From contig CALSCP010002426.1 in assembly GCA_943704425.1 (NCBI GenBank), positions 1-64,000 of the forward strand: DNA of 64,000 bases. Reading direction: 5' to 3'. This DNA is from Ministeria vibrans ATCC 50519 (lineage: Eukaryota; Protista; Filasterea). The notes below the pieces were generated by a model. The model searched no databases. It had not been told where the DNA came from and was given only the letters and a program-made list of their open reading frames with translations. The translations under genes were made by a program, and so were the position numbers. How positions within the stretch are numbered: the first letter of the stretch is position 1; each line of letters starts with the position of its first letter. Of the stretch, positions 28,077-57,598 are shown one piece after another.

Positions 28077-30351
28077 TGACGTTTAATATAAAAATATATA
28101 ATTATAATAATTATTATTATTATAATAATTATAATTATTATAATATAATTATATACATATGTATGTGTGGGGGAGTATGTGCTTAATATTCGTGAGTGTG
28201 TTCAATGTGCTTAGTGTGTGTGCTAATATGATGACACTATGAGTGGAGCAGTCATCTATGCACTCATATACATATATACGTACAAGGCAAAGGTCATGTT
28301 CTCAAAGATGCGTCCCCGTCGAGCTCGTGCAATGGCGTCCTGGATGGCGACGCCGTGCGTGCGCTCGGCGGCGGCGTCGCACAGGGCAAACCCGTCGGCA
28401 GGCAGGAAGTGATGTGCGGTCTGCGACTGCTTGAGCCAGTCGAGCGTGACGACGTGCGGTCCGGCACAGAGGGCCGCCAAGAACTTGGCAGTGCGTTTGA
28501 TCTTGCCTGCAACCAAATGTGTACAAGGAGGCTCGTTGGGATCGCTACCCGTAAGCACCGTGGCCCCAAGTTGCACGGCGCATGCCGACCACTTGACGCG
28601 CTCCTGTGTGCTCACGCCCGACGTGAACAGCACACACGGCGGGCGTTCGACATGCGCCGGCTCTACACTTGCTTGCTTCTTTGCGGGCGACAGAGACGAC
28701 AACTGACGACGGGCGGCAGGCGATACCGCTGCAAATGATGCGGTTGCATCGGGGTTGTGTGTGTCGTTGTCATCAAAGTGAGCATCGGTGGCGGTGCGTT
28801 TGGAACGACGCGTCGGCGAGGTGTTAGAAGGGGCGGAGGGGCTGGGTATGGGTGCTGCTGGCAGGACGAGACTGGCCTGAGGCGAATGGAGAGCATTGGA
28901 GGCATTGCGAGCATTGGCTGCGGATGGCGCAGCTTGAGCGGCCGGCAGTGGGCCACTAGAAGATGGGGCGGACGAGCCAACGGAGGCGGTGATGACGCCG
29001 GAGGAGGCGTGACCCGACCCAACGTCGGGTTCGTCGCGGGCGTCGTCTGCGGTTGATGATGCGTCGCTGAGAGCAACAGCGCGCACAACAGCGGGCTCGC
29101 GACGTTCCGCCTCAAACAACGAAGAAAACACGAGGGTGTTGGCGGCGGGAGAGAGTTCGGTGTAGCGCGGAAGAGAGGCGTCGGGCAGTGTGCGCAGGGC
29201 AAAGAGGTCCAGAAGCCAGCGCACATTGACAATGCGCACCTTCCATGCGAGCGCATACTCGTACTTTTTTCCTTTGGGCGCCAGACATATACAGTGGGTC
29301 GAGCCTCGCGTCATGGACCGGTGGAACTCGACCTCGAGGAAGAAAAGCATGTCCTGGATGAGGATACGTTCGGGATTGAGAAAGCCCGACAGGACAACGC
29401 GCAGTCGCGCGAAACTTGGATTGATCTTGCGCGTGACAATGGGTAGCATGAGCGGGTGCCAACACAGCGTCGGTGACCCTTGTGCCTCGAGCGTGTCTAT
29501 CACCGCGTCAATCCAGTAGTTGGTGTGAATGTGCTTGCCGGCGCGCACGGCCGCCGCATAGTCGGACCCTTCACGGTACATGCTGAAGAAGTGTGTGCAC
29601 TCGTCAACGGAGTCGGTCACGCGTCCGCCCGCCTGTAACACCCGAGACTTGAAACCCTCAACGAGTTTCGGGTCAAGGTACTTGTAGCCATTGAAGCAAG
29701 CGACGACCTTGGTGATGGTCGGCACCGACATGTCTCTTTGAGGCAAGCGACTTCGCTCGCGCGCACATGCAAACACCACGTCGACGGCAACCGCCACGGA
29801 CCCTTCATGCCCGGGAATGTCGGTGTCTTTGCTGTTGCTCGTGTCCTGCGAGATCACATGGGTCGTGTGGCCCGGAAAGAAGTCGTCGTCGACGCGTCCG
29901 CCGTGATGGACAAGCAGCGCCACCAGCTCCGCCTTCTTCCGGTCTCCAATGCCCTCGAGATGATACAAATAGGCACAGACATCGGTAAAGCAGGCTCTGT
30001 TGCGCGGATCGTGGTTCTCCAGCGGGATCTGGCGCGACACGCACAGGTCGACGGCGTACAGCCACGACGGCTTCACCACATTGACGTTGGCGCGCGCTGC
30101 GAACATGAGAAGAATCAGCATCGCCGAAACGGCACACGGTGGTGCTTCTGCGTCGGTCGGTGGTCCATACCATAGACTGCCTCCGAGTGTGCAAAGTGCG
30201 CAACGGGGCTGACAACGAGCGAGGCGGACGCGTCGTCGTCGACAAGATCACCGCCATGCCGCTCGACAATGAGCGCCAGTTCCGACACTTCGTCCGCCGA
30301 CCCTACCGTCTCCGCAATGAACACCCTACTGCCCGCAAGGGGACCTGGCAT
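27694..30351 (-). CDS. PAXIP1: PAX-interacting protein 1 (PTIP), multi-BRCT
   Basis: Six BRCT-like units, including SGF..ER..THCIC..PKGKKYEYALAWKVRIVNVRWL and THLVAGKIKRTAKFL..VTLDWL..DAAAERTHG, ending TPQINPDVATMSALVQRAGG..YSVELLL. Confidence 0.8.
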
Positions 30352-31074: not shown

Positions 31075-33046
31075 ATGACTCGACCTGCAACTCGATCAAC
31101 TACGGCAGCTGCGAAGCAAACCGAGCGATCGTGGACGGCCGAGGAGCTCGCCAAGCACAACGTTCCGTCCGACTTGTACATTGCGATTCGTGGCAAGGTC
31201 CGGTCGTTTCGCTGTAGTCTTTACACAAATCCCACGGACTGTGTAGCCGCCCGGTCTCACCCCGCCTGCCACAGCATCCAACACACGCATCCCCTGCCCC
31301 TCAAGCGTTGAAATCCCCCGCGCCCTCCGTCGTCTGCGTCGCTCCCCAAGATCCCAACAATCATCGCGTGGTATCAGAAACTGCGTTTCTCTCTCACTCA
31401 CACACGCACTTTCTCGCACTCTGTAGGTGTACGACATCACCGACTTTGCCAAGCGTCACCCCGGCGGTATGGATGTGCTGCGCATTGCAGCTGGTCGTGA
31501 CGCGACCAATGTCTTTGAGATGTACCATCGGCTGTCGCTGCACGCCATGGTGCGCACGCTGCCGTGCATGGGCACCCTTGACCACGCCGAGCTGCCCACC
31601 TTCCCCGAGCCCAACGCCTTCTTCCGTACCGTCAAGCAGCGCGTCGAAGTATGTCTTGTTCTCCTTTTTCCACCTTGATCTTCCCACATTGACTGTTGCT
31701 TATTTTTCACTCGTGTAGGATCACTTTGTCAAGACAAAGCGCGATCCAAAGGTCGCACCGTGGATGTGGGTGCGCTACGCTCTCATCTACATGACCATCA
31801 TTGGAAGCTACCTGGTGCAGACGTTTGTCCTTGGCGACGACCAGTTTGCCGGCCGTCTCGCTCTGGCTCTGCCGCTGGGATTCGCCCTGGCGCTGCTGGG
31901 TCTCATGCCCATGCACGACGCAAGCCACTTTGCGGTGTCGTCGTCGCCGTGGGTCTGGCGTGCGCTGGGTGCCACTCACGACTTCCTTAACGGCGCGTCG
32001 TACTATGTGTGGCTGCAGCAGCACATGCTGGGCCACCACCCATACACCAACATTCATGGGGCGGACCCCGACGTCGACACCAACGAGGCCGATGTGCGCC
32101 GCATCAAGCACGTTCAGAACTGGTTTCCCTTCTACTTGCACCAGCACGTCTACGTGCCCCTGCTCTACGCGCTCCTTGGCCTCAAGACGCGTCTGCAGGA
32201 CATCACCATTGTCTATGTGCTCCGGCGCAACGGGGCAATCCGCGTCAACCCCCCGTCGCTCTGGCACCACACCGTCTTCATTTCCGGCAAACTCTTTTGG
32301 CTGTTCTGGCGCATCATCGTGCCCTTTGCCCTCATGCCGTGGTGGCAGGCCCTTGCCGTCTTTGCTCTGCAGGACATGGTCTCGTCTTACTGGCTTGCTC
32401 TCACCTTCCAGGCCAACCACGTTGTCCGCGACGTCGACTGGCCCGCCATGCCCGACACCCCCGACCGCCGCATTGACCTTGACTGGGCCACCATGCAGAT
32501 GCGCACCACCCAGGACTACGCCCATTCCTCCTGGTTCTGGAATGTCTTCTCCGGCGCTCTCAACCACCAAGTCACTCACCACATCTTCCCTGGCGTCTCT
32601 CAGGTATCTTCCCATTCCCATTTTTCTCTCTTATTTGCTGTTGCTCATCTTTGGTGTTTTGTACCTATCCACTTTCCTCTCATGTTTCTCTTTTGCATTT
32701 ACCCTCTCTTATCTCATCTTTCTCTTTTGCATTCCCACTTTCCTTTCTCTCATCTTTGGTGTTTTGTACCTATCCACTTTCCTCTCATATTTCTCTTTTG
32801 CATTTACCCTCTCCCATCTCATCTTTCTCTTTTGCATTCCCACTTATCTTTGGTGTTTTGTATCTATCCACTTTCCTCTCATCTTTCTCTTTTTCTTAGT
32901 ACTACTACCCAGAAGTATCGCCTATTGTTGCAGCAACCGCCCGCGAATTCAACGTCCCCTACCACTACAAGGAGACGTATGCGGGTGCGCTTGGCTCGCA
33001 CTTGGGCCATCTGTACGATCTCGGTCGCAAACCCTCAGCTGACTGA
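31075..33046 (+). CDS. Front-end (delta-5-type) fatty acid desaturase with fused cytochrome b5
   Basis: HPGG; His boxes HDASH, QHMLGHHPYTN and QVTHH; SGALNHQ; last exon YYYPEVSPIV..LYDLG. Confidence 0.93.
32645..32895. repeat. Intronic tandem duplication (~105-bp unit, ~2.5 copies)
   Basis: atctttggtgttttgtayctatccactttcctctcat recurs near 32648, 32752 and 32847. Confidence 0.85.
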
Positions 33047-33376
33047 ATTGTGAACTCCCGTTTTTGTTTTGTACTTTATCTCAATATTCTCTCAAGTCTG
33101 ATCACTCACTTCTCAATGCTATTAGCTATCTTCGGCCCATTTACCATTTACATCTTTTCTTTTGTTTTTTGTTTTCAATTGATCTTTTTCTCACTCAGTA
33201 GTTTGGGTAAGAAATAACTACGAATACTCATACTCGTACTCATTTTTTTTGTTAAAAAGAAAAGCCGCTCTTTGTTCGCCCGAATTGAGAGGTATCGCCC
33301 TGCCCAGCCCCGCCCGCCGTGTCTCTTGCTATTCTCCTCTCAGCACACTGCCCTAGTACTCCTTTTTCGCACTTTG

Positions 33377-33870: not shown

Positions 33871-36680
33871 ATGAGGTTACCGTTTGCGTGCTGCAAGTCG
33901 CCGCAGCCCGAGGCAATCGACTACAGCGAATTTGAATTGACGGCTCTTCCTCGTGATGTGCTGCAAGCGGAGAAGGAGCTGCGCGAGCTCAATCTCGACG
34001 GCAACTCCTTCGCCAATTTGCCCGAGGCCATTCTGCGACTGGAGCACCTCGTGGTCCTCTCGGCGCGCCACAACAAGATCAGTTCGTTGCCCCCAACGCT
34101 GTCACCGTTGCGTGCGCTCCAGGAACTCCGTCTGAGCAACAACGACCTCGAAGAGCTACCCGATCGATTTGGCGAACTCTCTTGCCACACCCTCTTACTC
34201 GACAGCAATGCCCTCTCATTTCTTCCCGCCTCCTTTGCTTCCATGTCTCTTACCTACCTCGACTTGTCCGAAAACCAAGTATGTCTGTCACACACACGCA
34301 ATAGTGATACATAATAATTGTTATTATAATCATTATACTCATAGTCACGTCACGTCACGTCTATGCATAATGAAATACACATAGAAAAACACTGAAATAC
34401 TCTACTGTAATATCTTTCTAGATCCCTATGCTACCTAGTAACTTTGGCGACCTCAAAGGGCTGCGTGAGTTGTGGATGCGCGAAAATCTGTTGCACGAGC
34501 TTCCGGCGAGTTTTGCACAGCTCAAAGAGCTCACCAAGCTGGGCATGTCGAACAACGTCCTGCAGACACTACCATCTAACTTTGGTGACCTCAAGGCACT
34601 CGAGGAATGCTGGATTGACGAGAATGAGATTCGGGCGTTGCCGGCGTCCATAGGCTCGCTCTCGTCATTGCGCCTTCTTGACGTCTCGCAGAACCAACTG
34701 TCGTCGTTGCCCGTCGAGTTTGGTCAGCTCACCAAGCTTACCGACCTCTGGCTGAAGAACAATCTCATTACAGAGATTCCAGCCGAGTTTGGCAACCTGT
34801 CGGCTTTGCAGACGCTCTGGCTCGAGAGCAACCGTCTCTTTGAGCTGCGCTTCTCCTTCCAGCGCATGCCGCAGCTCAAGGAACTGCGTCTCACCTGCAA
34901 TCGTCTTTCCAAGCTACCCGACAGCGTCGGCGAGCTTAGCTCCATGCACACACTCTACGTCGACAACAACCGTCTTGACGAACTGCCCGATGCCTTGTGC
35001 AAGTGTCGTATCCTGCGCAGTCTCTGGGTTGGTAACAACAACCTGCGCCGTCTGCCTGCAAGCTTGGGCCGTCTCACCGAGCTCGAGGTACTTGGCCTCA
35101 CCGGCAACGTCATCGATCAACTGCCCGTCTCCATGGTCAAACTGCCTCACCTCAGTGCCATCTGGATCCTCGACACACAACGCAAGCCACTGCCACCGCT
35201 GCATGTTGAGCGCACCCAAGAGGGCATGGAGATTGTCACTTGCATCTATTTGCCTCAGGTGCGCGACCAGCATGACAACGATAGCGACGACTCCGAGGAA
35301 AGTGATGACGAGGAGGAGGGAGAAGAGGAGGAGGAGGAGGATGACGAGCCTGTAGACCCAGCCGCCGAGCTGCTCGCCAAACAGGCTGCTGCGAAGGCTG
35401 CTCTCGCCGAACATGCCGCATCCGCCCGCGGCAGTGCTGCTGTTGCTGCCGCCAAGGCAGACTCAGCTACTACTACTTCTACTAAAACGACTGTTGTTGC
35501 TGATGTGACCGTCACCCCAGCTGCGACGATTGAACCTGAAGAGAACTCGTCAAAAGTGGGCGAGGATTCCGACAGTGCTGTCGTTGGTGCTTCAGCTGCA
35601 TCGACCGCTGTGCACGTCACCAAGCTGGGTCATGCGTTGGCGGATGATCTGCAAGATGATTGCGACTCGATGGCACCCGACGTGGGGACCAAAGAACCGT
35701 CGCTTGTTTCCTCCACAGGTGATCTGGCAGCTTCGTCAGACGTTCCACCCTCGCGCGCAAGCCAAAGACCACCGGGCTCGTCTCCACCCGCACCCAAGCG
35801 ACGTTCGCTGGAGTCGGCTGCCGAGCGAAGCCTCAGCGACGGACTGAGCGAACAGAGAGCCGTGTCTGTGTCACCCATTCTCGACGCCGACGTGTCCCCG
35901 TCCAACTCCGTGATGGCGTCGTCCAGTGCCGCAGCGGCGCTCGAGGAGAAGCGCGCGCGCCTGGCTGACATGGAAGAGGCGGAGCGTATCATGGAACTGG
36001 CAATGGCCGAGGCCGAGGCCGAGGCGGGCCTGGCTCCTACTGCCTCCGCGTCCGCTGGCGTTTCACCGCAACCCTCGTCTGCGTCTCCGGTCGTGGCCGT
36101 CGAAGGCGAGTCGAACGAAGAGAAAAAGGAGGAGGCGGAGACAAAGACTGGGACACCTGAGGCGGAAACAAAGACTGGGACACCTGAGGCGGAAACAAAG
36201 ACTGGGACACCTGAGGCGGAGACAAAGACTGTGACACCTGAGGCGGAGACAAAGACTGTGACACCTGAGGCGGAGACAAAGACTGTGACACCTGAGGCGG
36301 AGACAAAGACTGTGACACCTGAGGCGGAAGAGAAGGAGGAGGAGGAGGAGGAGGAGCCAAAGACAGAGACGTGTGAGGATGAGGATAAGGCCGAAGAGAC
36401 GCGCACCGAAGAACCAGAGGTGGTCGTAGCGCACGCTAATGGCACAGTGGCAGAGGAGACCAAGGCGAAGACCGAGGACACGATGGCGGCAGAGGCCGAA
36501 GCGGCGGACAATAAGGCCGCGGAGGCACTTGCAATGGAGTTTATGGCGGAGGCACGGGCCAACTCGATGGACGAAGCGGATGAGACGCCGACGGTCAGCG
36601 CGAGTGCATTGGGCACAGTCGATGCGTCCATTCTTACTCTCAGCGGAGCGTCTGCTGGTGTCCACGAAGAGACTGTATAA
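33871..36680 (+). CDS. LAP-family LRR protein (Scribble/Erbin/LRRC1-like) with LAPSD and no PDZ; acidic tail
   Basis: N-terminal PFACC..IDYS..LTALPRDV..EKELRELNLDGN; about 16 LRRs; LAPSD LSAIWILDTQRKPLPPLHVERTQEGMEIVTCIYLPQ; one intron at ~34279-34421. Confidence 0.85.
36131..36327 (+). repeat. 27-bp coding tandem repeat (PEAETKT[G/V]T), about 7 copies
   Basis: gaggcggagacaaagactg(g/t)gacacct read directly. Confidence 0.95.
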
Positions 36681-36829
36681 TTGTGTCTTCGTCCACCACT
36701 TTTTCTTTTTCTCCCTTCTCTTCTCTTCCTTCCCTTCATCATGTACAATAGCAACAAACCAAAATTAATTATTTTATTATTATTATAAGACGTATTCTAT
36801 TCAATGTATTAAAAAGGAGTGTGCGAGAA

Positions 36830-37180
36830 TCAGGGCTGAGGAGGGTGCTCGGTGGTATAGGCACGGGCAATGCCAGTCTGGCCCGCAATGGCATCGACAA
36901 CGGGGGTCTGGCCCAGACACGGCTCAAGGCCCTGGAAGGACCTCCCGGCCAGGAAGGAGGCCGCCGGACTGTGTACTGCCAGAGCACCCGACGCCATCCG
37001 CACTGCAACCGCCGTCGTTCGTGCCCCTGCAACTCCCTCTCCCTCGTTCGCCCCGGCCCCTCCTCCGCTGTACAGTCGCTGGCTCACCAATGAGTGTCGG
37101 ATGTGCTCCACTGCGTCACCCTCTTGGCCACCCTCTTCCCCTATCGCAGCCTCTTCTTCTTCTTCACCTGCTCCTCCTCC

Positions 37181-37211
<31 letters not shown>

Positions 37212-38581
37212 GCTGTTGCTGCTGCTGCTGTGGCATCGGCGTCGGCAAGAACCCCGCGGAAATCGGTAGAGTAGGCACCGGTCCAGGCGACATCGTCGCG
37301 GCAGGCAAGATCCATCTCAAAGGGCGTGACGACGGGCCGGAAGAAGTCGCGCGAGTCGAGCAGCGCATGCTCGGCACACGCAACCAGCACAAAGCAATCA
37401 ATCTCCTGGAAGTTGGCCATCTTGGCAACATTGAGCTTGCCCATGACAAAAGTGTATGCTTTCTTGCCGGCACGCTCAATGCGGGTGCGCAAATGAGCAA
37501 TGACGTCGAGGTAGCGGCGCACGCCCAGAGTGCCAGCCACAATGCCCACAACCGCCGCATTGCGCGCTCGCTCCACCATGTAGTACCGTCGCATCAGCGC
37601 CTGGTTCACATTCACCGTCTCCCGTCGCCCCTCCCGCCGCTCCGGGTCGTACGTCATGAACGCCCCATAGCCACTGTGCGCCATCATGAGACTCGTCAGC
37701 GCTGCACTCGAACTCGCCCCGACAAACACCAGCGAGACCGCCTCGTCCGCCACCCCCGCCTCCACTGCAAACACACGTCCCAGAAGTGCCGTCGATTCTG
37801 CCTCCTGCGTCCCCTCCTGCGTCTCTGGCAGTGCCAAGCTGCTCACTACAAGGTGTGTGTAGTCGTCCAGGCGCTGCGCAAGCCCATCTACATAAACATA
37901 AAAAAATACCATCATCTCGCATTCCATCGATCCCTCCTCACACGCATACACTTGCTTACCAATGGCATGAGCATACACGGTGTCGTAGACAAGCACAATG
38001 TGCGCTGTTCGATCAGGAATGAGCGAGCGCATCGTCTCGAGCGCATGCCCAACATCCAGAGTCGCGCGTCCAAACACATAGCGCACCGGCAATCGCTGTG
38101 TTGGACTTAAACATGATCGCCCCACGTGGATGACGGCGTCGGCGCTCCCGTGCTGCGCTGCAACTTCGTCCACACAGCAAGCGCCGTACGACGTGTCGCC
38201 CAGCACAAAAAGTCTCGCGCGCTGCTCTGTGCTCGCGTGCTGCTCGAGCGCCGCCTCCAGCATGCTTATTAACCTTGCTGCATCAACAAGAAGCTCGTCG
38301 GCAATCTGGACGGCAACCTACACACACAGTGGGGCGTCAGGCGCTGCAAACGTGTCCCTCTCGCTCGTACGCGTTGGTGGCGTCGCTCACTAATCCATCG
38401 TGCACACGATTCAACCTCGTAGTACTCGCAAAACGCATCGTCGGAGACATTTCCCACCCCATGTGTCCCCACAGTCACCTTGAGAGTGAGGAAAAGTCGT
38501 GAGAAGCGGTGGAAAAGAGCGGAGAGGCGATACCTTTCTGTTAATCACGTCGGAGCCATCATCGCTAAAGGGCACCGCCAT
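36830..38581 (-). CDS. DPH2: Diphthamide biosynthesis protein 2
   Basis: MAVPFSDDGS; LGDTSYGACCVDEVAAQH; VHVGRSCLSP..LPVRYVFG; GKLNVAKMANFQEIDCFVLVAC; RSFQGLE..GQTGIARAY. Confidence 0.95.
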
Positions 38582-38898: not shown

Positions 38899-39916
38899 TC
38901 AGTTCTGGGCATCATGAAGAACAGCAGGAATTGGGAGGAGCCAGTGCCACCAGCGACGGCGGCGGTTGCGGACGAGGGTGCGCCAGCGAGAGAGGCGGGA
39001 GCGGCCGCAGACACAGACGGGACGGGTGGGTCCACACGCGGCACACACGGGCTGGAAGGCGTTGGAAACAGACGACGACGCCAGGCGTGCAAGAACGCCA
39101 ACTGTTGTGGTGTTTTTGATCAGCAACATGGTGTGAAACGACCAGAAGAGCACCATAAAAAGCGAGAGCATTGCGACCGGTCCAAATAGCACCGCGGCAT
39201 CGTTGACGACGTGACACTCGACTGGAAGCATCACGCCGCGTGGTGCATTCCACCAGCAGGCAAAGAACGGCTGTATGGTCAGTATGGAGGCCACGAGCGT
39301 GCCCGCGAGCGCCCAAGTGAGAAAGGAGTAGAAGTAGACGAGGTTGCCGGCACCGACGCAGCCCAACGTAAAGGGACAGTGATGGCACAAGTGCGCCACG
39401 CACACCCCACAGCGTCTGCAGTGCACACTGCCCGGTGTCTGTCGCACCGAGCACGAGTCGCACCACGCAAGTGGAGGCTCAATTGTGTCGTCTGCGTCGC
39501 CGGGGGGTGCGACTCCGGCCGGCACTCGCACTGCCTGCACGAAATTGTACACCCCATTGATCCACATGTAGCTCACGAGAACCCCCAGGATGCGCCCTCG
39601 CGTGCTCTCCCAGGGGGACGCCGGATGGCAGGTGTAGGGCAAGAGGACAAGGTAGAAATACAGAATGGCTAGGGAAAGAGGTGAGAAAGAAACAAAGTGA
39701 TAGAGAGAGGTCAAAGAAGGCGACAGGCCGACGAGCACGCTTACACACGACTCCAATGAACCAGACCAGCAGAAACAGAATCACATCGCCAGCATTGCGC
39801 GCGATTCGGTGGAGAATGCGGGCGCGGGAGCGGGGACAGCAGCCGCGCACGACCTCAAGGATGACGGGGATCTGCAGGACGAACACGGCGCCAATGACAA
39901 TCGCAACAAGCGTCAT
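38899..39916 (-). CDS. zDHHC-family S-acyltransferase with a CHHC variant motif
   Basis: Cys-rich domain WCDSC..PGSVHCRRCGVCVAHLCHHCPFTLGCVGAGN..YF; flanking TM helices; NTTTV (TTxE-like). Confidence 0.85.
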
Positions 39917-48734: not shown

Positions 48735-51700
48735 CTACAGTCCATCAGCAATGTTTGACAAGTCAGTCATGAGCCTCGTGCCTGTCGCGTCAGCTGAGCC
48801 CGCCGGAGCCGCCGCATTCATCGGCGGCATCGCAGCCTGTGCCGAAGCCCCTTGCGCTGATTGTTGTTGTTGCTGTTGTTGCTGCTGCTGTTGCTGCTGC
48901 ATCTGCTGCTGCTGCAACAATTGCTGCTGCTTCTGCTGCTGTGCGCGCAGCGTCTGCTGCTGCTGACGCGTCTCTTGAAGTTTCCGTGCCTCCGACACCA
49001 CCTTGTTCTCGTTCTCCGTCAACACTGCCCCTTCGCGGTGCTTCTGCACAAACTGCGCCGCAAGCAGCAACAGTTGTTGTTGCTTGAGGTACGTCTCGTG
49101 CTTGAGCAGCTTCTGGCGTGACGCCTCCAGCTCGGGCTTGCGCTTCTCTTGCTCCGCCGCAGGCAACGATGGCAACTGGTCAAAGTCGTGCTGCAATCGC
49201 GTCTTCTCCGTCTGCAACGCCTTCTTTTGTTCCTGCAGCAAATGTTGTTGCTGTTGAATGCGTCCAATCAGCTGTCCCGGTGGCAACACGCTGCCTCCTG
49301 TCGCAGTCCCCGTTGCAGATGCCGCAGCTGCACCAGCACCAGCACCAACACCAGCACTAGCACCAGCACCAGTACCAGTACCAGCACCAGTACCACCCTG
49401 GGCCGAGGCAGGGGCGACAGCAGTAGCTGCTGCTGGAACCGCTGGCTGGGGCTGATGAGGCGGGGCCGCCTGCGCTGGCCCAGACAGATTTGTGTCGGTG
49501 GTGGAACCAGCAAACATACCTTGCATAGGCACAGGTGTCATGTCAACAGGAGCGACCGCAGTCGTCGTTGTTGTTGTCGTCGTCGTGCTCGACGTGGTAC
49601 CGCTCGTGGTCGAGGCGCCATCCGCGTCAGCCTGAGACTCATCCGTGTTTTCCGTTGGATTCGGGTACACCGGCAACTGTCCCGAGTTGAGCAAATTTTG
49701 CTGGCGTTGTTGCTTGCGCTGGAAAAGCAAACGACGCTGCGTCTGCTTGTTGGCCTGCAGGCGCTTCTCGGCAATCCGTGTCTGCAGTCGTTCCTTGATG
49801 CCGGCGCAAAAGGGCACGGGGCAGTTGCTCGCCTGACAGTGCTTCGCGTGATAGCAACACAGTGCGACAAGCTGCTTGCACACGTTGCAGACGGGCGCCT
49901 TGGTCTGGCACGTCTTGGTGTGCTGCACCACCTGCTTCATCTTCTGACAGCTCTGACGATTGCAGTTGGGCTCGACACATTTGCATGCATGCACCAGCGA
50001 GTCGATGCATCGTTGGATGGCCTTGGTGCGGTTCGCCGTGTCCGCCTGGTCACCCGCCGCACCGGCCGCCACACCGCCACCTTCGCCAAAACCGGCGTTA
50101 TGCAGCGTGTGCGGATGCTTGCTGCCCTCCGCCTGGTAGCACGTGTTACACAAGTCAAAGTCCGTCTCGCACTCGTTACAGTGCCAGCGCGATTCGTCCA
50201 TGTTGATCTGATTCTTGCACTTGTCGCACGAGAACTCGGCGCCCGTGTCCTCTTGTTTGTGCAAGTGATAGAGAAACATCATGCTTGCATACTTGGCCTT
50301 GCGCAAGTCATCAAACTCGTAGTGATTGTCCTTGCACAACTCGAGAAACGCCTCGCGACCGTCCAGCAGCACACAAGGCATGGGCGGGTCGCGGTCGCGC
50401 AAGTTGGTGTCGCTCTCCAATTTGGGGTCGAGTGGGTTATTGAGCACCACGTAGAAAAAGCCCTCCTTGCTCTTGTCCATGGTGTTGTAGAGACGCTCGG
50501 CGAGCTCGGAGCGCATGCGGGCGGCACCCGAGGCCGCCTTGGCCGCCTTGCCCGACAGCTTCTTGGGCGCCTTGCTCTTGCTCTTGCTCTTGCTCTGGCC
50601 CTTGGTGTTCTTGCCCTTCTTGCCCACCGTCGCCACACCGCCCTCCTTCTCCGCGAGCGCCTCTTGCTTGAGCTCACGAATCTGATCCTCAATGGCATTT
50701 GGCCAGTAGTCCCCCTCAAAGTAGCACAGCTGACGCGCATACACAATCTGCTCGAGTGCCACCTGCTTGATGGGGTCGTGATAATCGATGGCAATGCCCT
50801 CGGCCCGCGCAATGTGCAACAAGTGGCGATACCAGTCCTGCAGACGCTTGGGCTTGGGCACCTTCTGCGACTGAGGGTGGCAATAAAAGATGTAGTCGTC
50901 GCCGGGACTAGGCGGACACGCCCAAATGTGGGCCGACAGGAAGCCGAGGTGTTTGCACCAGGCGAGGTAGGAGATGAGAATTTCGTGGTAGACGCGCGTG
51001 CGCAGGTTCTTCGGCTGAAAGTAATGCACCGAGTCGAGGTAGGAGATGTAAACACGGCGGTTGTTGGGTGCCGGGCAGTTGCTGCCGTACTCTTGCACAT
51101 GCAGTCCAAAGAAGCACACATCGACACCGTCCATCTTCTGGAAGGCAAAGAGCGCACGATGGCGGTAAGGGTAGGTGGTGGGCATGGGGGGCTGGCCCTC
51201 GGCCTCCTTGGTGCTGCCGTACTCGCGCAACAAAGGACGCACGTCGTGTGACTTCTCGCCATTGAACACAACGCGCACCGTAATCTCGCCGAGCTGTTGC
51301 GAGCTGCCGAGCGTCAGCTTGGCAATGCGACGCTCGATAAAGTCGCTCAGGTTGGTGCGAGGCAGACGACGAGCCGAAAAGACCGTCTTGGAGTCGCGGA
51401 AGTCGCGCACGAAACGCTCCGCCTGACGCTTGCATTGTTTGCACAGCGCAATCTTGTCCGACTGTTTGTTGTGGAGAACGCACGCTTCGTGAAACTTGCG
51501 CGGACACAGCTCGCAGTCAAGCAGCGGCTCCGTGTCGAGCTGGTCGTGACGCTTGAGCTTGAACTCTGCCTTGGGAATGGGCTCGGGCTGGCCATCAATG
51601 ACAATGTCGGTGCTGGGCACCTCGCGAAAGCATCGCTCACAAAAGACAATGCGCTTCTCGTCGCACGAGTAGTAGTTGCTCTGGAAGGGGATGGATGTAA

Positions 51701-53835
51701 GGCACTTGCCGTAGCAGTACATGGTGACGGGTCGATACTTGTTGCGCTTCATGGCACAGCAATAGCCCATGCGGTTGGTCAGGACCGGCTCAATCTGCTG
51801 CTCAAACGAGCGCGCCACCTTCTCGGCCATCTTGTAGATGCGCGACGACTTGGCGTTGTAAAGGTAGGCATTGGCAAAGACAAGGCGCATGTCGTCGCAG
51901 TATGCTACCGGCTCCTTGTACTCGAGTTTCTCCAGCTTGGAGTGGATCGTGCCAAAGTCCATGGGATGCTTGATGATTTGCGGATAGTCGGGGATGTTGA
52001 GCAACTCGGGATCGACGGGCACACGAAAGGGGTACGCGTCCGCGTGGTCCATCACAATGAGGTGCACTGGCTTCAGGGCGTCGCGCAGACTCTTGGGGTC
52101 CCAAGGACGTCGCGCGCGCAAGTTGGGCGCCTGTCGTTTCAAGTCGTCGAGCGTCATGGTCTGCGGCGGGGGCGCCTGCTGTTGCGCCGGCACACCTCCT
52201 GCTGCCGCTGCACCGGCCACGTTGCCCACAACTCCCGCACCGCCCCCAATGCGAGCACCGCCCACACCGCCTACGGCAGTCGCGGCCGCATTGCCTTGCG
52301 ACATTTGCGCTCGCTGCTGCATGAGAAACTGCTGCTTCCGTGCCAAAATGGCCTTTTGTTGCTTTATGGTCTCGGCGGTGCCGGCCGCGCCGGCACCTAA
52401 CGCACCCACCGAGCCCGTCATTGAGGCGGCAGCGGCTGCGGCGCCGCCGACACTGCCAGTCATGCCGACCGAGGCGGCTGCCGCAGCCGAGGTTGCATTG
52501 CTATTACCAAGGGCAGCACCCGCCGCCCCCATGCTCAATGCAGGATTGGCAGAGGCGTGTTGGGCAGCGGCCGCGTGCAAGCGCTGTTCGTGAGCCTTCT
52601 TCAACTTGTAGATTTTCTCCGCGAGCAAGTGATAGTACTGATCCTGGCTGGTGCCCGACTGGTAGACGTCCGTCTCAATTTTTTGGGCTACTTCACGTAG
52701 TTGTGAGTCGCTCGTGCCGCCTTGGGCAACACAGTCGCGAAGAGCATCCACCAGTTTTTGTACGAGTTTGATGCGATGCTGTTGGTTCAGGTCGATACGC
52801 CAATTGGCAGAGGCAGCAGCGCCGGCGCCGGCGCCGGCCGCGGCCGCGGCGGACGACTGTTCATGCTGAGGGTGACCCTGTAGCATGGATGGCTGCCCTT
52901 TGGTCGGGTTGTGTTGCTGCTGATGAGCACGGGTGTCCGAAGTGGGGAGAACCCCAGAGTGAGCAAGACTCTGAAACTGACCAATGGTGGCAGCGTTGGC
53001 GGCGACCGTGGCGGCAACCGTGGAGGGTGCCGCTTCTTTCAACTCGGGAACGTGGGGTGCGCACTGAGGACACTTCTTGCCAAGATTGCATTGAGCGCGA
53101 TGGGTGAGAAAATCGCGCGAGGGGAAGCAAAGGGGCTCGATGCACTGACGGCCCGCACGGCAGCCTTTCATGTGGTTGACAAGTTTCTTTGTGGTGGCAC
53201 AGTCGGCCACGTGGCAGTCGGTAAGCAAGCATGTCCCCGTGTGTAACAGAGCCTTTTCATGTTGCAGCGACAGTCCCGAAACCCTCTGAGTGTCTGAGGT
53301 TGACGCAGGGGCGGCGGCTGCTGCCGCTGCATTTGCGTCTTCAAGGGGTCTGCGAAGCGGCTCGCAAATGACACACAGTTTGTTCTTGCACTGGCTGTAG
53401 TGTGAAATGATTTGACGTGATGACGCGCAGTGGGGCTCGGGACATTGTCTTCCGGCGCGACACTGCGCCATGTGAGTGAGGACGTCCTTCATCGTGTTGC
53501 AATGGGGCACTTGACACTCTGACTGCTTGCACTTGTGTGCATGGATGAGAAGCAGCAGTTGCTGTCGAATCGCCTTCTTTCTGTCGGGTTGCGATGCACC
53601 ATTGGAGGCGGTCGCAGATGCTGACGATGCGGCGGCAGCAGCGGCTGCTGGAGCAGAAGTGGACGCACTGAAGTTGTTTGTAGACGTGTCCATAGGTACG
53701 GCCGACGATGATGAAGTAGTAGTCGCAGCGGCAGTCGCAGCAGCAGCGGTGGCAGCGGCGGCTGCAGTAGTCGTTGTGGGAGCAGCGGTCGCGGTTGTAG
53801 TGGATGATGGTACTGTTGATGATGATGATGATGCG

Positions 53836-53866
<31 letters not shown>

Positions 53867-54095
53867 CGACTGGCTGGACAGTGGGGAGTGGGACAGCGCC
53901 AGAGGTGGCGGCGGTCGCTGGAGCAGGCGTTGTCGTGTACTCGTCCATGTCATCCAAATCAGGAAGTTCCGCCTCAACATCGTAGTCGGTGTCGCCTGTG
54001 GCTGCTGCTGGCACGGCCGCGGTGGCGCCCGACGACGATTCCACCTTGACGCGCTTCAGTGGCGGCTCTTCGCCAGTATCCTCTCGGTAAACCAT
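48735..54095 (-). CDS. CREBBP: CBP/p300 histone acetyltransferase (TAZ1, extra TAZ, KIX, bromo, RING/PHD, KAT11 HAT, ZZ, TAZ2, Q-rich tail); single coding exon
   Basis: RKKAIRQQLLLLIHAHKC; YYHLLAEKIYK; PFRVPVDPELLNIPDY; ISYLDSVHYF; HIWACPPSPGDDYIFYCHP; IQRCIDSLVHAC. Confidence 0.97.
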
Positions 54096-56133: not shown

Positions 56134-57598
56134 CTCTGTCTACTTGTTTTTTTCTCTTTCTTTTTCACTGTAGACGCACCAGAGCCAACCGAAACGGAAC
56201 TACGCAAGTGCCGTTGTGGTGGTGAAGCGCCAGACTGAAATGAAGTCGCAGCCGTCGTCGCCAGGCCACCAAGCGCCACCATTTGTCCCACAATTTACAC
56301 CATCAGCCACGACTAAATCTAGTGCATTGCCTGTACATTCATCGACTGGTGGCGCGTCTGCACCGATAGCAGGCACGGCTAACAAACTGATTGCAGAGGC
56401 GGCCGCGCGAGCACGCGCTGATGCCAATTCCGAGGCGACCGAAGGCGCCCTCGATCTGAAGGCCGACGACTGGTCAAGTGTGATGCCCGATGTTTCCAAA
56501 GGGGGCACTTATGCGCCCTGGTCGTCATCCGATCCAAAGCTCGATGCGGGTGGTCAAGTGTATGAGCCGTATCGCGCGCAAGTCGAACAGCCTTTTCAAG
56601 CACTCAAGAAGAAACGCACGCGCAACAAGGTCAAGGCTGAAGGTGGTCAAGCTATGGTGAAAGCTCAAGCTTCTAGCCAGCTGACTCAGGGACAAGCGAC
56701 TCGATCGGCTGCTAGGATCAAAACGAAGACGACCGTTGTTGAAAACAGTCATGGTGGTGGTGGTGGTGGTGGTGGTGGTAGTGGTGGTGGTGGTAGTCAT
56801 GAGTGGATCCAAGTAGCGCGAGCTGGCAAGACTGCGAGTAAGGGTGCTTCATCGTCGTCAGCATCATTTGCCCCCTCCAGCACCACAGGCACACGTTCCA
56901 CCACGACGGCCACACTCGTTGAGACACGAGCGCGACCTTTTGTTTCCGTGTCGTCTGAGCCTCGTGTCATGCTGCGCCCACGCGAGACCTACTCGACCGA
57001 CTCGCTTGTGTCCAATTCATCGAATGCACGCTACTTTGTCATCAAGTCGTTCAGCGAGGACGACGTGCACAAGTCCATCAAGTATGGTATGTGGGCGAGC
57101 ACAGAGCAAGGTAACCGCCGTCTGAACCAGGCTTATGTCGAGCAGGCGCGCGACCAGGCGCCCCTCTACTTGCTCTTCAGTGTCAACAAGAGTGGTCACT
57201 TTTGCGGTGTGGCCGAAATGACCTCCGAGGTGGACTACGCGACTGACCAGCACGTGTGGGCATCGTCGGGCAAGTTCAAGGGCACATTTACAGTGCACTG
57301 GATCACCGTCAAGGACCTGCCCAACGGTGCACTCAAGAACATCATCAACCCGTGGAACGACAACAAGCCCGTCTTCATTGCGCGCGACGCCACTGAACTT
57401 CCTCCGCAGTGCGGTCGCGACTTCCTTCGCATCTTCCAGCAGCACCGCATCACCCAGTCGCTCTTCGACGATTTCTCTTTCTACGACAGTCGTGAGCCTC
57501 AGATCGTCGCTGGTGAGCTTAGCGACTATATTCCCAAGAAGAAGCAGAAGGGCAAGCCATCTGCTGCCGCTGCTCCTGCTTCTCCTTCCTCCATCTGA
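55464..57598 (+). CDS. YTHDF-type m6A reader
   Basis: RYFVIKSFSEDDVHKSIKYGMWAST..GNRRL; LLFSVNKSGHFCGVAEM; VKDLPN; NDNKPV..RD; SLFDDFSFYD; low-complexity N-terminus. Upstream exons at 55464 and ~55532-55643. Confidence 0.93.

What the first reader, a model, noticed from the sequence alone, without database searches (positions are those of the whole stretch)
33871..36680. Scribble/Erbin-type LAP protein (LRR + LAPSD) with no PDZ domains in an apparently non-animal genome
Seen: N-terminal di-Cys (FACC), about 16 LRRs and the LAP-specific signature LSAIWI..Q.KPL..L..E......TC..LPQ at ~35151-35258. These are followed only by an acidic low-complexity tail with a 9-aa repeat. The convergent DPH2 stop lies 150 bp downstream, leaving no room for PDZ exons. 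Known: LAP proteins (Scribble, Erbin, Densin, LRRC1) are basolateral polarity factors generally regarded as metazoan; the LRR+LAPSD region carries polarity function and N-terminal cysteines are palmitoylated. Inference: this may be a pre-metazoan membrane-anchored LAP0 core onto which PDZ domains were later added.
Basis: partly seen in the sequence, partly recalled or inferred. Interest (0 to 1): 0.8.

Follow-up and report, generated by a model that had tools for sequence, protein, structure and literature searches.

The report
Scribble-family LRR protein outside animals
A small, compact genome of a flagellated, non-animal microbe encodes the leucine-rich-repeat core of the Scribble/Erbin/LRRC1 ("LAP") cell-polarity family without any PDZ domain, although reviews describe that family as an animal invention.

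Summary
A two-exon gene (33871-34278 and 34422-36680) encodes an N-terminal Cys-Cys, 16 LRRs in the register of animal LAP proteins, a LAPSDa-type cap at 35151-35267, and a 469-residue acidic, Ala/Ser/Thr-rich tail with a 27-nt x 7.3 repeat. No PDZ domain and no LAPSDb were found. The stop codon of DPH2, on the opposite strand, lies 149 bp downstream.

It is a LAP relative, not a generic LRR protein.
- A 69-residue query (LRR16 plus cap) was searched against 1.84 billion proteins. 122 of the best 150 hits were LAPSDa-bearing proteins, and every named one is an animal.
- A LAPSDa profile built from 121 animal proteins scores the window at 41 bits. The next non-LAP sequence scores under 6.
- A tree built from the LRR columns alone places the window as sister to all animal LAPs (UFBoot 94, SH-aLRT 72), away from its own genome's LRR paralogues.
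- It matches 8 of 13 LAP-specific residues; non-LAP proteins match 0-23%.

The genome (29.7 Mb) gave no Wnt, TGF-beta or nuclear-receptor hits. It does have tektin and WOPR genes, so it is not an animal.

One environmental contig carries an orthologue with the same layout. S-acylation, cortical scaffolding and "PDZ added later" remain inferences. The scan's index showed no earlier finding of this gene on other DNA.

The parts
33871..34278 (+). Exon 1: start codon, N-terminal Cys-Cys, LRR1-5 and the first half of LRR6
   Evidence: ORF and GT donor at 34279. LRR Pfam families hit. Aligns in register with P0016 residues 23-144.
33889..33894 (+). Cys7-Cys8 codons (TGC TGC), a candidate S-acylation site
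   Evidence: Read directly from the sequence. Scribble junctional localisation needs N-terminal palmitoylation (PMC6400555). Acylation was not tested here.
34279..34421 (+). Intron, 143 nt, GT...AG, phase 0, inside LRR6
   Evidence: Both flanking frames are closed inside it. The alignment to P0016 is contiguous across the junction.
34422..35150 (+). Exon 2, first part: second half of LRR6 and LRR7-16 (23 residues each, no indels relative to animal LAPs)
   Evidence: Gapless alignment with nine animal LAPs. Best single-stretch scores are 175-196 bits to animal LAPs and at most 122 bits to the genome's own LRR paralogues. The LRR-only tree places it with LAPs.
35151..35267 (+). LRR17-like strand plus LAPSDa cap (exon 2 residues 244-282)
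   Evidence: LAPSDa profiles score it at 15 bits (6 training sequences) and 41 bits (121 sequences). The AlphaFold2 model shows a strand at 246-248 and a beta-hairpin at 261-264/270-273, with block-mean pLDDT of 87-97 for residues 241-280. It is single-copy in the genome.
35271..36677 (+). Acidic, Ala/Ser/Thr-rich tail of 469 residues with no recognised domain; it starts with a Asp/Glu run
   Evidence: Composition. No Pfam domain. pLDDT is under 50 from residue 283 in the model. No LAPSDb match.
36132..36328 (+). Tandem repeat, 27 nt x 7.3 copies, 98% matches, encoding ETKT[G/V]TPEA
   Evidence: Tandem Repeats Finder; translation.
36666..36680 (+). C-terminus ...E-E-T-V plus TAA stop
   Evidence: Position -2 is Glu, so this is not a class I PDZ-binding motif. 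It fits only the loose class III pattern.
36681..36829 (.). 149-bp spacer between the two convergent stop codons; it leaves no room for PDZ exons
36830..38263 (-). Convergent neighbour: DPH2-type diphthamide synthesis gene
   Evidence: Pfam PF01866, E 2.3e-81.

Best explanation
This is a real, single-copy gene of a non-animal, flagellated unicellular eukaryote. It belongs to the LAP family (Scribble, Erbin, Densin, LRRC1/Lano, Lap1, LET-413) and branches as sister to all animal members sampled.

It encodes only part of the 'LAP-unique region': an N-terminal Cys-Cys, 16 LRRs, and the LRR17/LAPSDa cap. It has no LAPSDb and no PDZ domain. In their place is a long disordered acidic tail.

How it most likely works (inferred from animal LAPs, not shown here): the two cysteines are S-acylated and, together with the LRR solenoid, hold the protein at the plasma-membrane cortex. 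The concave LRR face, closed by the LAPSDa cap, serves as a docking surface for cortical partners. In human Scribble those partners are PP1, Lgl and band 4.1 proteins. The protein would thereby mark or organise a cortical domain of the cell.

Because it branches outside the animal radiation and lacks PDZ, the simplest reading is that the LRR-LAPSDa core predates animals, and that PDZ domains (and perhaps LAPSDb) were joined to it on the animal stem.
For: Shown here:
- Collinear alignment. 39% identity over 294 residues to a coral Scribble-like protein, running through LAPSDa with a single gap. Exon 1 is in register. The multiple alignment with nine animal LAPs has no gaps across LRR6-16.
- Exhaustive phmmer search with 69 residues (LRR16 plus cap) against 1.84e9 representatives. 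278 hits had E <= 1e-3. 122 of the best 150 carry LAPSDa, usually at about residue 365-430.
- Names. Every named protein among the 30 I looked up is an animal: tapeworm lap4, Intoshia, Macrostomum, insect lap1, beetle LRRC1-like, springtail, Seison, Gordionus scribble homologue, hagfish, horseshoe crab, sea urchin.
- LAPSDa profile of 121 animal sequences: 41.3 bits for the window, under 6 bits for any non-LAP sequence.
- LRR-only trees: sister to animal LAPs, with support 96 (quick) and 94/72 (careful).
- Own-genome LRR paralogues score at most 122 bits, against 175-196 bits for animal LAPs, and they branch elsewhere.
- 8 of 13 LAP-specific conserved LRR residues match, including the equivalent of human W203. 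Non-LAP proteins match 0-23%, and divergent true LAPs match 62% or more, apart from one truncated row at 38%.
- ESM Atlas: the nearest clusters are 'LRRC1-like' (0.97, 0.96, 0.95), followed by Erbin.
- AlphaFold2 model: mean pLDDT 92.8, with the cap folded as a strand plus hairpin.
- Organism: no Wnt, TGF-beta or zf-C4 hits; tektin and WOPR present.
- A second, environmental copy with the same layout (L005/P0243). It is 46-52% identical and shares the loss of the 'LP' in LRR12.

From the literature:
- LRR+LAPSDa+LAPSDb without PDZ rescues polarity. The LRRs give cortical localisation and LAPSDa gives 'basolateral identity' (PMC6605793).
- The concave face binds PP1, Lgl and EPB41L5, and the LAPSDa region is needed for that binding (PMC8569552).
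- Scribble localisation needs N-terminal palmitoylation (PMC6400555).
Against: - LAPSDb is absent. It is part of the family's definition and is needed for basolateral retention in human Scribble.
- The equivalent of K272 (the 'SILK' lysine, part of the triple mutant that abolishes PP1-A/B binding) is Trp here. No RVxF or SILK motif is present.
- No Lgl-type domain was detected in the genome (LLGL and Lgl_C scans empty). These scans have no positive control, so this is weak evidence.
- Support for the sister position is good but not decisive (SH-aLRT 72 in the careful tree, and the bootstrap had not fully converged). The window sits on a long branch (1.05-1.4).
- No SHOC2, RSU1 or SDS22 sequence could be included in the tree.
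- There is no expression evidence for the splice or the 3' end.
Confidence: 0.75

Rival explanations
1. The gene is a secondarily reduced LAP. The common ancestor already had LRR + LAPSDa/b + PDZ, and this lineage lost LAPSDb and the PDZ domains. LRRC1/Lano in animals also has no PDZ. Identity as a LAP relative stands under this reading; only the evolutionary direction differs.
For: PDZ-less LAPs exist inside the animal clade: LRRC1-like clusters, and P0245, P0267 and P0271 without PDZ. So loss, or absence, has happened more than once. The genome has at least 16 PDZ matches elsewhere, so PDZ domains were available. The tail is a fast-evolving repeat-rich region.
Against: Both non-animal copies lack PDZ: the window, and L005 as far as its 1789 bp reach. 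They lie outside the animal radiation. One gain on the animal stem therefore needs fewer events than an earlier gain followed by loss. Two sequences are too few to decide.
Confidence: 0.2
2. The gene is a generic Ras-group LRR protein (SHOC2, LRRC40 or ROCO-type). Its C-terminal cap only resembles LAPSDa by chance or convergence.
For: Summed phmmer scores are higher for repeat-rich non-LAP proteins (ROCO, PP2C-LRR and bacterial LRR proteins) than for LAPs. The closest solved folds are Leptospira LRR proteins and SHOC2. Pfam sees only generic LRR families.
Against: Those high scores are sums of many off-register stretches. By best single stretch, the LAPs rank first for every slice of the query. 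The cap alone separates LAPs (11-21 bits) from all others (under 4). It reaches 41 bits on a broad profile. The LRR-only tree and the 8/13 signature residues do not depend on the cap.
Confidence: 0.04
3. The contig is animal DNA (a contaminant), or the gene was transferred from an animal.
For: Every named LAPSDa-bearing relative is an animal. The assembly is fragmented, with 2860 contigs.
Against: The gene is sister to all animal LAPs, not nested in an animal subgroup. Its neighbours are packed 149 bp apart. The CBP/p300 gene on the same contig is a single 1786-codon ORF that is only 43-45% identical to vertebrate CBP, with no closer relative found. Identity to animal LAPs is only 33-45%. Animal hallmark families are missing from the genome.
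Confidence: 0.02

Closest known systems
LRRC1 / Lano (the PDZ-less 'LAP0' member of animals)
   Same: It has 16 LRRs in the same register, LAPSDa directly after LRR16, and no PDZ domain. It is the nearest cluster by language-model features (0.97).
   Different: LRRC1 has LAPSDb and a short C-terminus, and it sits inside the animal clade. The window protein lacks LAPSDb, carries a 469-residue acidic repeat-rich tail, and branches outside all animal LAPs.
Scribble / Erbin / Densin-180 / Lap1 / LET-413 (LAP proteins with 1-4 PDZ domains)
   Same: They share the N-terminal cysteines before LRR1, the LRR register, and LAP-specific concave residues including the W203 equivalent (LRR9, L..xW.D.N). 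They also share the cap motif W[LI]...Q.KP....[VL]TC..LPQ.
   Different: The window protein has no PDZ and no LAPSDb. The K272 'SILK' lysine is replaced by Trp. LRR12 lacks the usual Leu-Pro.
SHOC2 (Ras-group LRR scaffold of the SHOC2-MRAS-PP1C holophosphatase)
   Same: It is a cytoplasmic 23-24-residue LRR solenoid. It is the closest solved fold with a known LRR-PP1 mode of action (TM 0.77 over about 253 columns), which makes it a plausible mechanistic analogue for PP1 docking on a concave LRR face.
   Different: SHOC2 has no LAPSDa cap, and its sequence alignment to the window is fragmentary (best stretch 65-177 only). It has about 20 LRRs and an N-terminal RVxF region. It was not available for the tree.
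Environmental orthologue P0243 / L005 (JGI metagenome 3300071654, contig of 1789 bp)
   Same: It is 46% identical over LRR11-14 and 52% over LRR15 to the cap. It has the same QRKP.PP variant of the cap, the same loss of Leu-Pro in LRR12, and a Ser/Ala/Pro-rich tail with no Pfam domain.
   Different: It has an intron between LRR14 and LRR15 that the window lacks. Its GC content is 61%. The tail sequences are unrelated. The contig is cut at the 5' end, and the organism is unknown.

Membership tests
LAP (LRR and PDZ) protein family | Sixteen N-terminal LRRs in the family's register | tested here: met
   There are 16 repeats. The alignment with nine animal LAPs is gapless over LRR6-16. Exon 1 is in register with P0016.
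LAP (LRR and PDZ) protein family | LAPSDa immediately after LRR16 | tested here: met
   Scores 41.3 bits on a profile of 121 animal LAPSDa sequences; non-LAP sequences score under 6. In the reverse exhaustive search, 122 of the best 150 hits carry LAPSDa. The cap folds confidently.
LAP (LRR and PDZ) protein family | LAPSDb (R..TP[YH]P.ELK-type motif) downstream of LAPSDa | tested here: not met
   A profile from six animal LAPs gives no hit anywhere in exon 2 at E <= 1000.
LAP (LRR and PDZ) protein family | One to four C-terminal PDZ domains (zero in LRRC1/Lano) | tested here: not met
   No PDZ family appears in either exon. There is no PDZ match on the contig. Only 149 bp separate the stop from the convergent DPH2 stop. 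The family does include a PDZ-less member, so this alone does not exclude membership.
LAP (LRR and PDZ) protein family | The LRR domain groups with LAPs rather than with other LRR families | tested here: met
   In LRR-only trees it is sister to the animal LAP clade, with support 96 (quick) and 94/72 (careful). ROCO, PP2C-LRR, plant RLK and own-genome paralogues fall outside. SHOC2, SDS22 and RSU1 were not in the tree.
LAP (LRR and PDZ) protein family | LAP-specific conserved residues on the concave LRR face (including human W203 and K272) | tested here: inconclusive
   8 of 13 LAP-specific columns match, and the W203 equivalent is kept. The K272 equivalent is Trp, and three other residues (of the five mismatches) in LRR7, 8 and 12 also differ.
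LAP (LRR and PDZ) protein family | N-terminal cysteines that are S-palmitoylated | not testable with these tools
   Cys7 and Cys8 are present about 10 residues before LRR1, as in Erbin-type and mollusc N-termini. Acylation itself needs an experiment.
LAP (LRR and PDZ) protein family | Restricted to Metazoa (as stated in reviews) | tested here: not met
   The genome lacks Wnt, TGF-beta and zf-C4 matches, has WOPR and tektin, and is 29.7 Mb. Reviews state that no Scribble-like gene is known in unicellular organisms (PMC9729800).
SHOC2 / Ras-group LRR proteins | Collinear similarity to SHOC2 along the LRR domain, with no LAP cap | tested here: not met
   Against solved SHOC2 chains the best stretch is query 65-177 only, out of four stretches. 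The LAP cap is present.

The most novel reading that the evidence does not exclude
The LRR-LAPSDa module of Scribble-type polarity proteins arose before animals. It already worked as an acylated cortical scaffold in a flagellated unicellular ancestor. PDZ domains and LAPSDb were fused to it on the animal stem, which would make Scribble a domain-shuffled elaboration rather than an animal invention.
Probability: 0.5. Interest if true: 0.7.

Novelty: new variant of a known kind. Interest (0 to 1): 0.6.

Why it matters
Reviews of animal origins list Scribble as a metazoan innovation and say that no Scribble-like gene is known from unicellular organisms (PMC9729800, PMC5968619, PMC4265756). A bona fide LAP-type LRR-LAPSDa gene in a non-animal genome, plus a second copy in an environmental contig, would move the origin of the functionally sufficient part of Scribble to before animals.

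It would also give a natural "minimal LAP" with no LAPSDb and no PDZ. With such a protein one can test what the module did before epithelia existed. It can be localised in a single cell, and it can be tested for rescue of LAP-deficient animal cells.

It fits the common pattern that animal scaffolds were assembled from older parts, so it refines the record and does not overturn it.

Tried and rejected
- One search used a reference one base out of frame (35083). Its result is void and was repeated correctly.
- The word-based search restricted to LRR16 plus cap found nothing (19 candidates, none scored).
- The exact-sequence look-ups of the exon 2 ORF and of DPH2 found no record, because records of this genome are withheld.
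- The CBP/p300 search meant to place the organism was saturated by vertebrates at 43-45% identity. It shows only that no closer relative ranked in the best 120.
- The species could not be named. The 18S gene is in hand (L001), but no rRNA reference set was available.
WOPR was found on two other contigs instead.
- The Lgl scans (LLGL, Lgl_C) were empty, but they lack a positive control.
- I first read the C-terminus as a class I PDZ-binding motif and rejected that. In E-E-T-V, position -2 is Glu, so only the loose class III pattern fits.
- Summed HMMER scores were rejected as a ranking criterion, because repeat-rich proteins inflate them.
- All searches, trees and the fold used exon 1 or exon 2 by reference, so there is no search or model of the full spliced protein.
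- Complex prediction was not run, because no specific partner was well enough founded.
- No SHOC2, SDS22 or RSU1 sequence could be fetched for the tree.
Full report
GENE MODEL AND OBSERVATION

The plus strand carries an ORF from the ATG at 33871 that closes at 34314, and a second ORF in another frame from 34428 to 36680. A GT at 34279 and an AG at 34420-34421 define a 143-nt intron. Removing it joins ...LDLSENQ to IPMLPSNFGDL..., which makes a regular LRR. Everything below was done on exon 1 (33871-34278) or exon 2 (34422-36677) by reference.

The splice is supported independently. BLASTP to a coral Scribble-like protein (P0016) aligns exon 1 residues 15-134 to 23-144, and exon 2 residue 4 to 150. 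The two exons therefore abut exactly in the homologue's coordinates.

The protein starts MRLPFACCK. It has 16 LRRs plus a 17th LRR-like strand. It continues into a 469-residue tail rich in Ala, Glu, Ser and Thr, with a 27-nt x 7.3 repeat at 36132-36328.

Pfam reports only LRR families. DPH2 is convergent, and its stop is 149 bp away.

IS IT A LAP PROTEIN?

Summed HMMER scores are misleading for repeat proteins. ROCO-type, PP2C-LRR and bacterial LRR proteins top the word-based search. Ranked by the best single collinear stretch, the eight animal LAPs in that set come first for every slice of the query. For the cap alone they score 11-21 bits, against under 4 for all 112 others.

I sent the 69 residues of LRR16 plus cap (window:35082-35288:+) to the exhaustive search of 1.84 billion representatives. 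There were 278 proteins at E <= 1e-3. 122 of the best 150 carry a LAPSDa, mostly at residues 365-430, which is where LAPs have it. The 28 others are ROCO-type and similar LRR-rich proteins.

Every named protein among the 30 I looked up is an animal LAP: tapeworm lap4, Intoshia, Macrostomum, dipteran lap1, beetle LRRC1-like, springtail, Seison, a Gordionus scribble homologue, hagfish, horseshoe crab and sea urchin.

A LAPSDa profile built from 121 of these animal proteins, without the window, scores the window at 41.3 bits over the whole profile. The next non-LAP sequence scores 5.7 bits among 1422 sequences, which include the window in six frames and the genome's own LRR paralogues. A narrower profile from six LAPs gave 15 bits and no other hit. 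These 121 sequences were retrieved with the window as query, which may favour window-like LAPs. They are nevertheless ordinary animal LAPs.

EVIDENCE THAT DOES NOT USE THE CAP

With the LAPSDa columns cut off, a 104-row tree places exon 2 as sister to the clade of all 85 LAPSDa-bearing proteins (SH-aLRT 96). A 60-row careful tree that also holds seven LRR paralogues from the same genome gives UFBoot 94 / SH-aLRT 72 for window + LAPs, and 100/98 for the animal clade. The paralogues fall among ROCO-type sequences.

The genome's best paralogue reaches 122 bits in one stretch. Animal LAPs reach 175-196 bits.

There are 13 LRR columns conserved in at least 80% of LAPs and at most 25% of non-LAPs. 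The window matches 8 of them. Non-LAPs match 0-23%. Divergent true LAPs match 62% or more, apart from one truncated row at 38%.

The ESM Atlas puts 'LRRC1-like' clusters nearest, at 0.97, 0.96 and 0.95, followed by Erbin.

The N-terminus resembles Erbin-type and mollusc LAP N-termini, with cysteines about ten residues before LRR1.

WHERE IT DEPARTS FROM THE FAMILY

LAPSDb is absent, and PDZ domains are absent. The equivalent of human W203 is kept. The equivalent of K272 (the SILK lysine) is Trp, and there is no SILK or RVxF motif. LRR12 lacks the usual Leu-Pro.

An AlphaFold2 model of exon 2 residues 1-303, with 21 homologues as its alignment, is confident (mean pLDDT 92.8). It shows the cap as an extra strand (246-248) plus a beta-hairpin (261-264, 270-273), with disorder from residue 283. 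Foldseek finds only generic LRR solenoids, with Leptospira LRR proteins and SHOC2 at TM about 0.77 over the LRR part. No LAP LRR domain appeared among the matches to solved structures.

THE ORGANISM

G000 is 29.7 Mb in 2860 contigs and has a eukaryotic 18S. The window is gene-dense and intron-poor. It holds a single-ORF CBP/p300 gene with TAZ, KIX, bromodomain, CBP-type RING and HAT domains. That gene is only 43-45% identical to vertebrate CBP, and no closer relative ranked in the best 120.

Six-frame scans found no Wnt, no TGF-beta and no nuclear-receptor zinc finger. These scans have no positive control, so each absence is weak on its own. The genome does have tektin, at 168 bits. That argues for a flagellum and against a reduced parasitic animal such as a myxozoan. 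It also has two WOPR (Gti1/Pac2) matches above the Pfam cut-off; to my knowledge that family is absent from animals.

I conclude that the genome is not an animal's. I could not name it. Notes by other readers of this scan suggest that it is near Holozoa, but I treated those as leads only.

A SECOND COPY

The closest hit in the exhaustive search is P0243. It is 52% identical over LRR15 to the cap, and its cap has the same QRKP.PP variant. It comes from a 1789-bp JGI metagenome contig (L005, GC 61%). The contig holds an upstream exon that is 46% identical to exon 2 residues 113-199, then an intron, then LRR15-16, the cap, and a Ser/Ala/Pro-rich tail with no Pfam domain. It shares the missing Leu-Pro of LRR12. 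So the PDZ-less layout is not a quirk of one assembly. Within G000 the gene is single-copy.

HOW IT PROBABLY WORKS

In animals the LRR+LAPSDa+LAPSDb region without PDZ rescues polarity. The LRRs give cortical localisation, LAPSDa gives 'basolateral identity', and LAPSDa/b together give basolateral retention (PMC6605793). The concave LRR face binds PP1, Lgl, EPB41L5 and GEF-H1, and it also mediates an inhibitory homodimer that needs LAPSDb. Removing the LAPSDa region loses binding to PP1 and Lgl (PMC8569552). Junctional localisation of Scribble needs N-terminal palmitoylation (PMC6400555).

By analogy, I propose an S-acylated cortical LRR scaffold whose capped concave face docks partners. Because it lacks LAPSDb, it would resemble the constitutively 'open', non-dimerising human truncation ending at residue 420. 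This is inference.

The partner set is uncertain. The SILK lysine is not conserved, and no Lgl domain was detected. A MAGUK-like PDZ+guanylate-kinase gene does exist on contig C2574. The function of the tail is unknown. Its C-terminus, E-E-T-V, is not a class I PDZ ligand.

COMPARISON AND NOVELTY

The closest known protein by architecture is LRRC1/Lano. By sequence, the protein is about equally distant from all animal LAPs (33-45% identity). Reviews state that Scribble is a metazoan innovation and that no Scribble-like gene is known in unicellular organisms (PMC9729800; PMC4265756). The study they cite defined Scribble by LRR plus PDZ (PMC5968619), and that definition would miss a PDZ-less relative. 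My paper searches found no report of a LAPSDa-bearing gene outside animals.

I rate it a new variant of a known kind: a LAP-family member outside animals with a reduced architecture. Whether PDZ was gained in animals or lost here is open. Parsimony on two sequences favours gain.

LIMITS

There is no SHOC2, SDS22 or RSU1 in the tree. The window sits on a long branch. There are no expression data. Exon 1 and exon 2 were analysed apart.

Noticed in passing
window 48738-54095 (-): A single uninterrupted 1786-codon ORF encodes a complete CBP/p300 architecture (three TAZ-type stretches, KIX, bromodomain, CBP-type RING, KAT11 HAT). It is only 43-45% identical to vertebrate CBP over bromodomain-HAT, and no closer relative ranked in the best 120.
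   Followed up: partly
window 38902-39756 (-): A DHHC palmitoyltransferase gene (Pfam E 5e-20) lies two genes downstream of the Cys-Cys LAP gene. Another reader notes CHHC in place of DHHC. I have no evidence of a functional link.
   Followed up: no
L005 (JGI metagenome 3300071654, contig Ga0620614_074607), 1-1789: An environmental eukaryotic contig (GC 61%) carries an orthologue of the window gene. It has an intron between LRR14 and LRR15 and a Ser/Ala/Pro-rich tail without PDZ.
   Followed up: yes
G000 contigs C1768:2534-3106, C2330:2410-2610, C1488:68786-69755: The genome has two WOPR (Gti1/Pac2) matches and a tektin gene, but no Wnt, TGF-beta, zf-C4, LLGL or Lgl_C matches. This is a mix of fungal-type and animal-type content in a flagellate.
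   Followed up: partly
G000 C2574:1534-2008 (-): PDZ and guanylate-kinase matches lie on the same strand about 200 bp apart, which suggests a MAGUK (Dlg/MPP-like) gene.
   Followed up: no
L001 (G000 C1833:34-1831, -): The 18S rRNA departs from the usual eukaryotic sequence at normally conserved stretches (for example around GATCGAAGACCATTAGACACGG). It could identify the organism if compared with an rRNA database.
   Followed up: no
window 31764-33053 (+): The fatty-acid desaturase ORF upstream ends in a duplicated hydrophobic His/Leu/Phe-rich segment (two near-copies of about 40 residues). This may be intron or repeat sequence read through, not coding sequence.
   Followed up: no
window 56216-57595 (+) and 28259-30121 (-): There is a YTH-domain gene (E 8e-49) and a multi-BRCT gene (TopBP1/Rtt107-like).
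   Followed up: no
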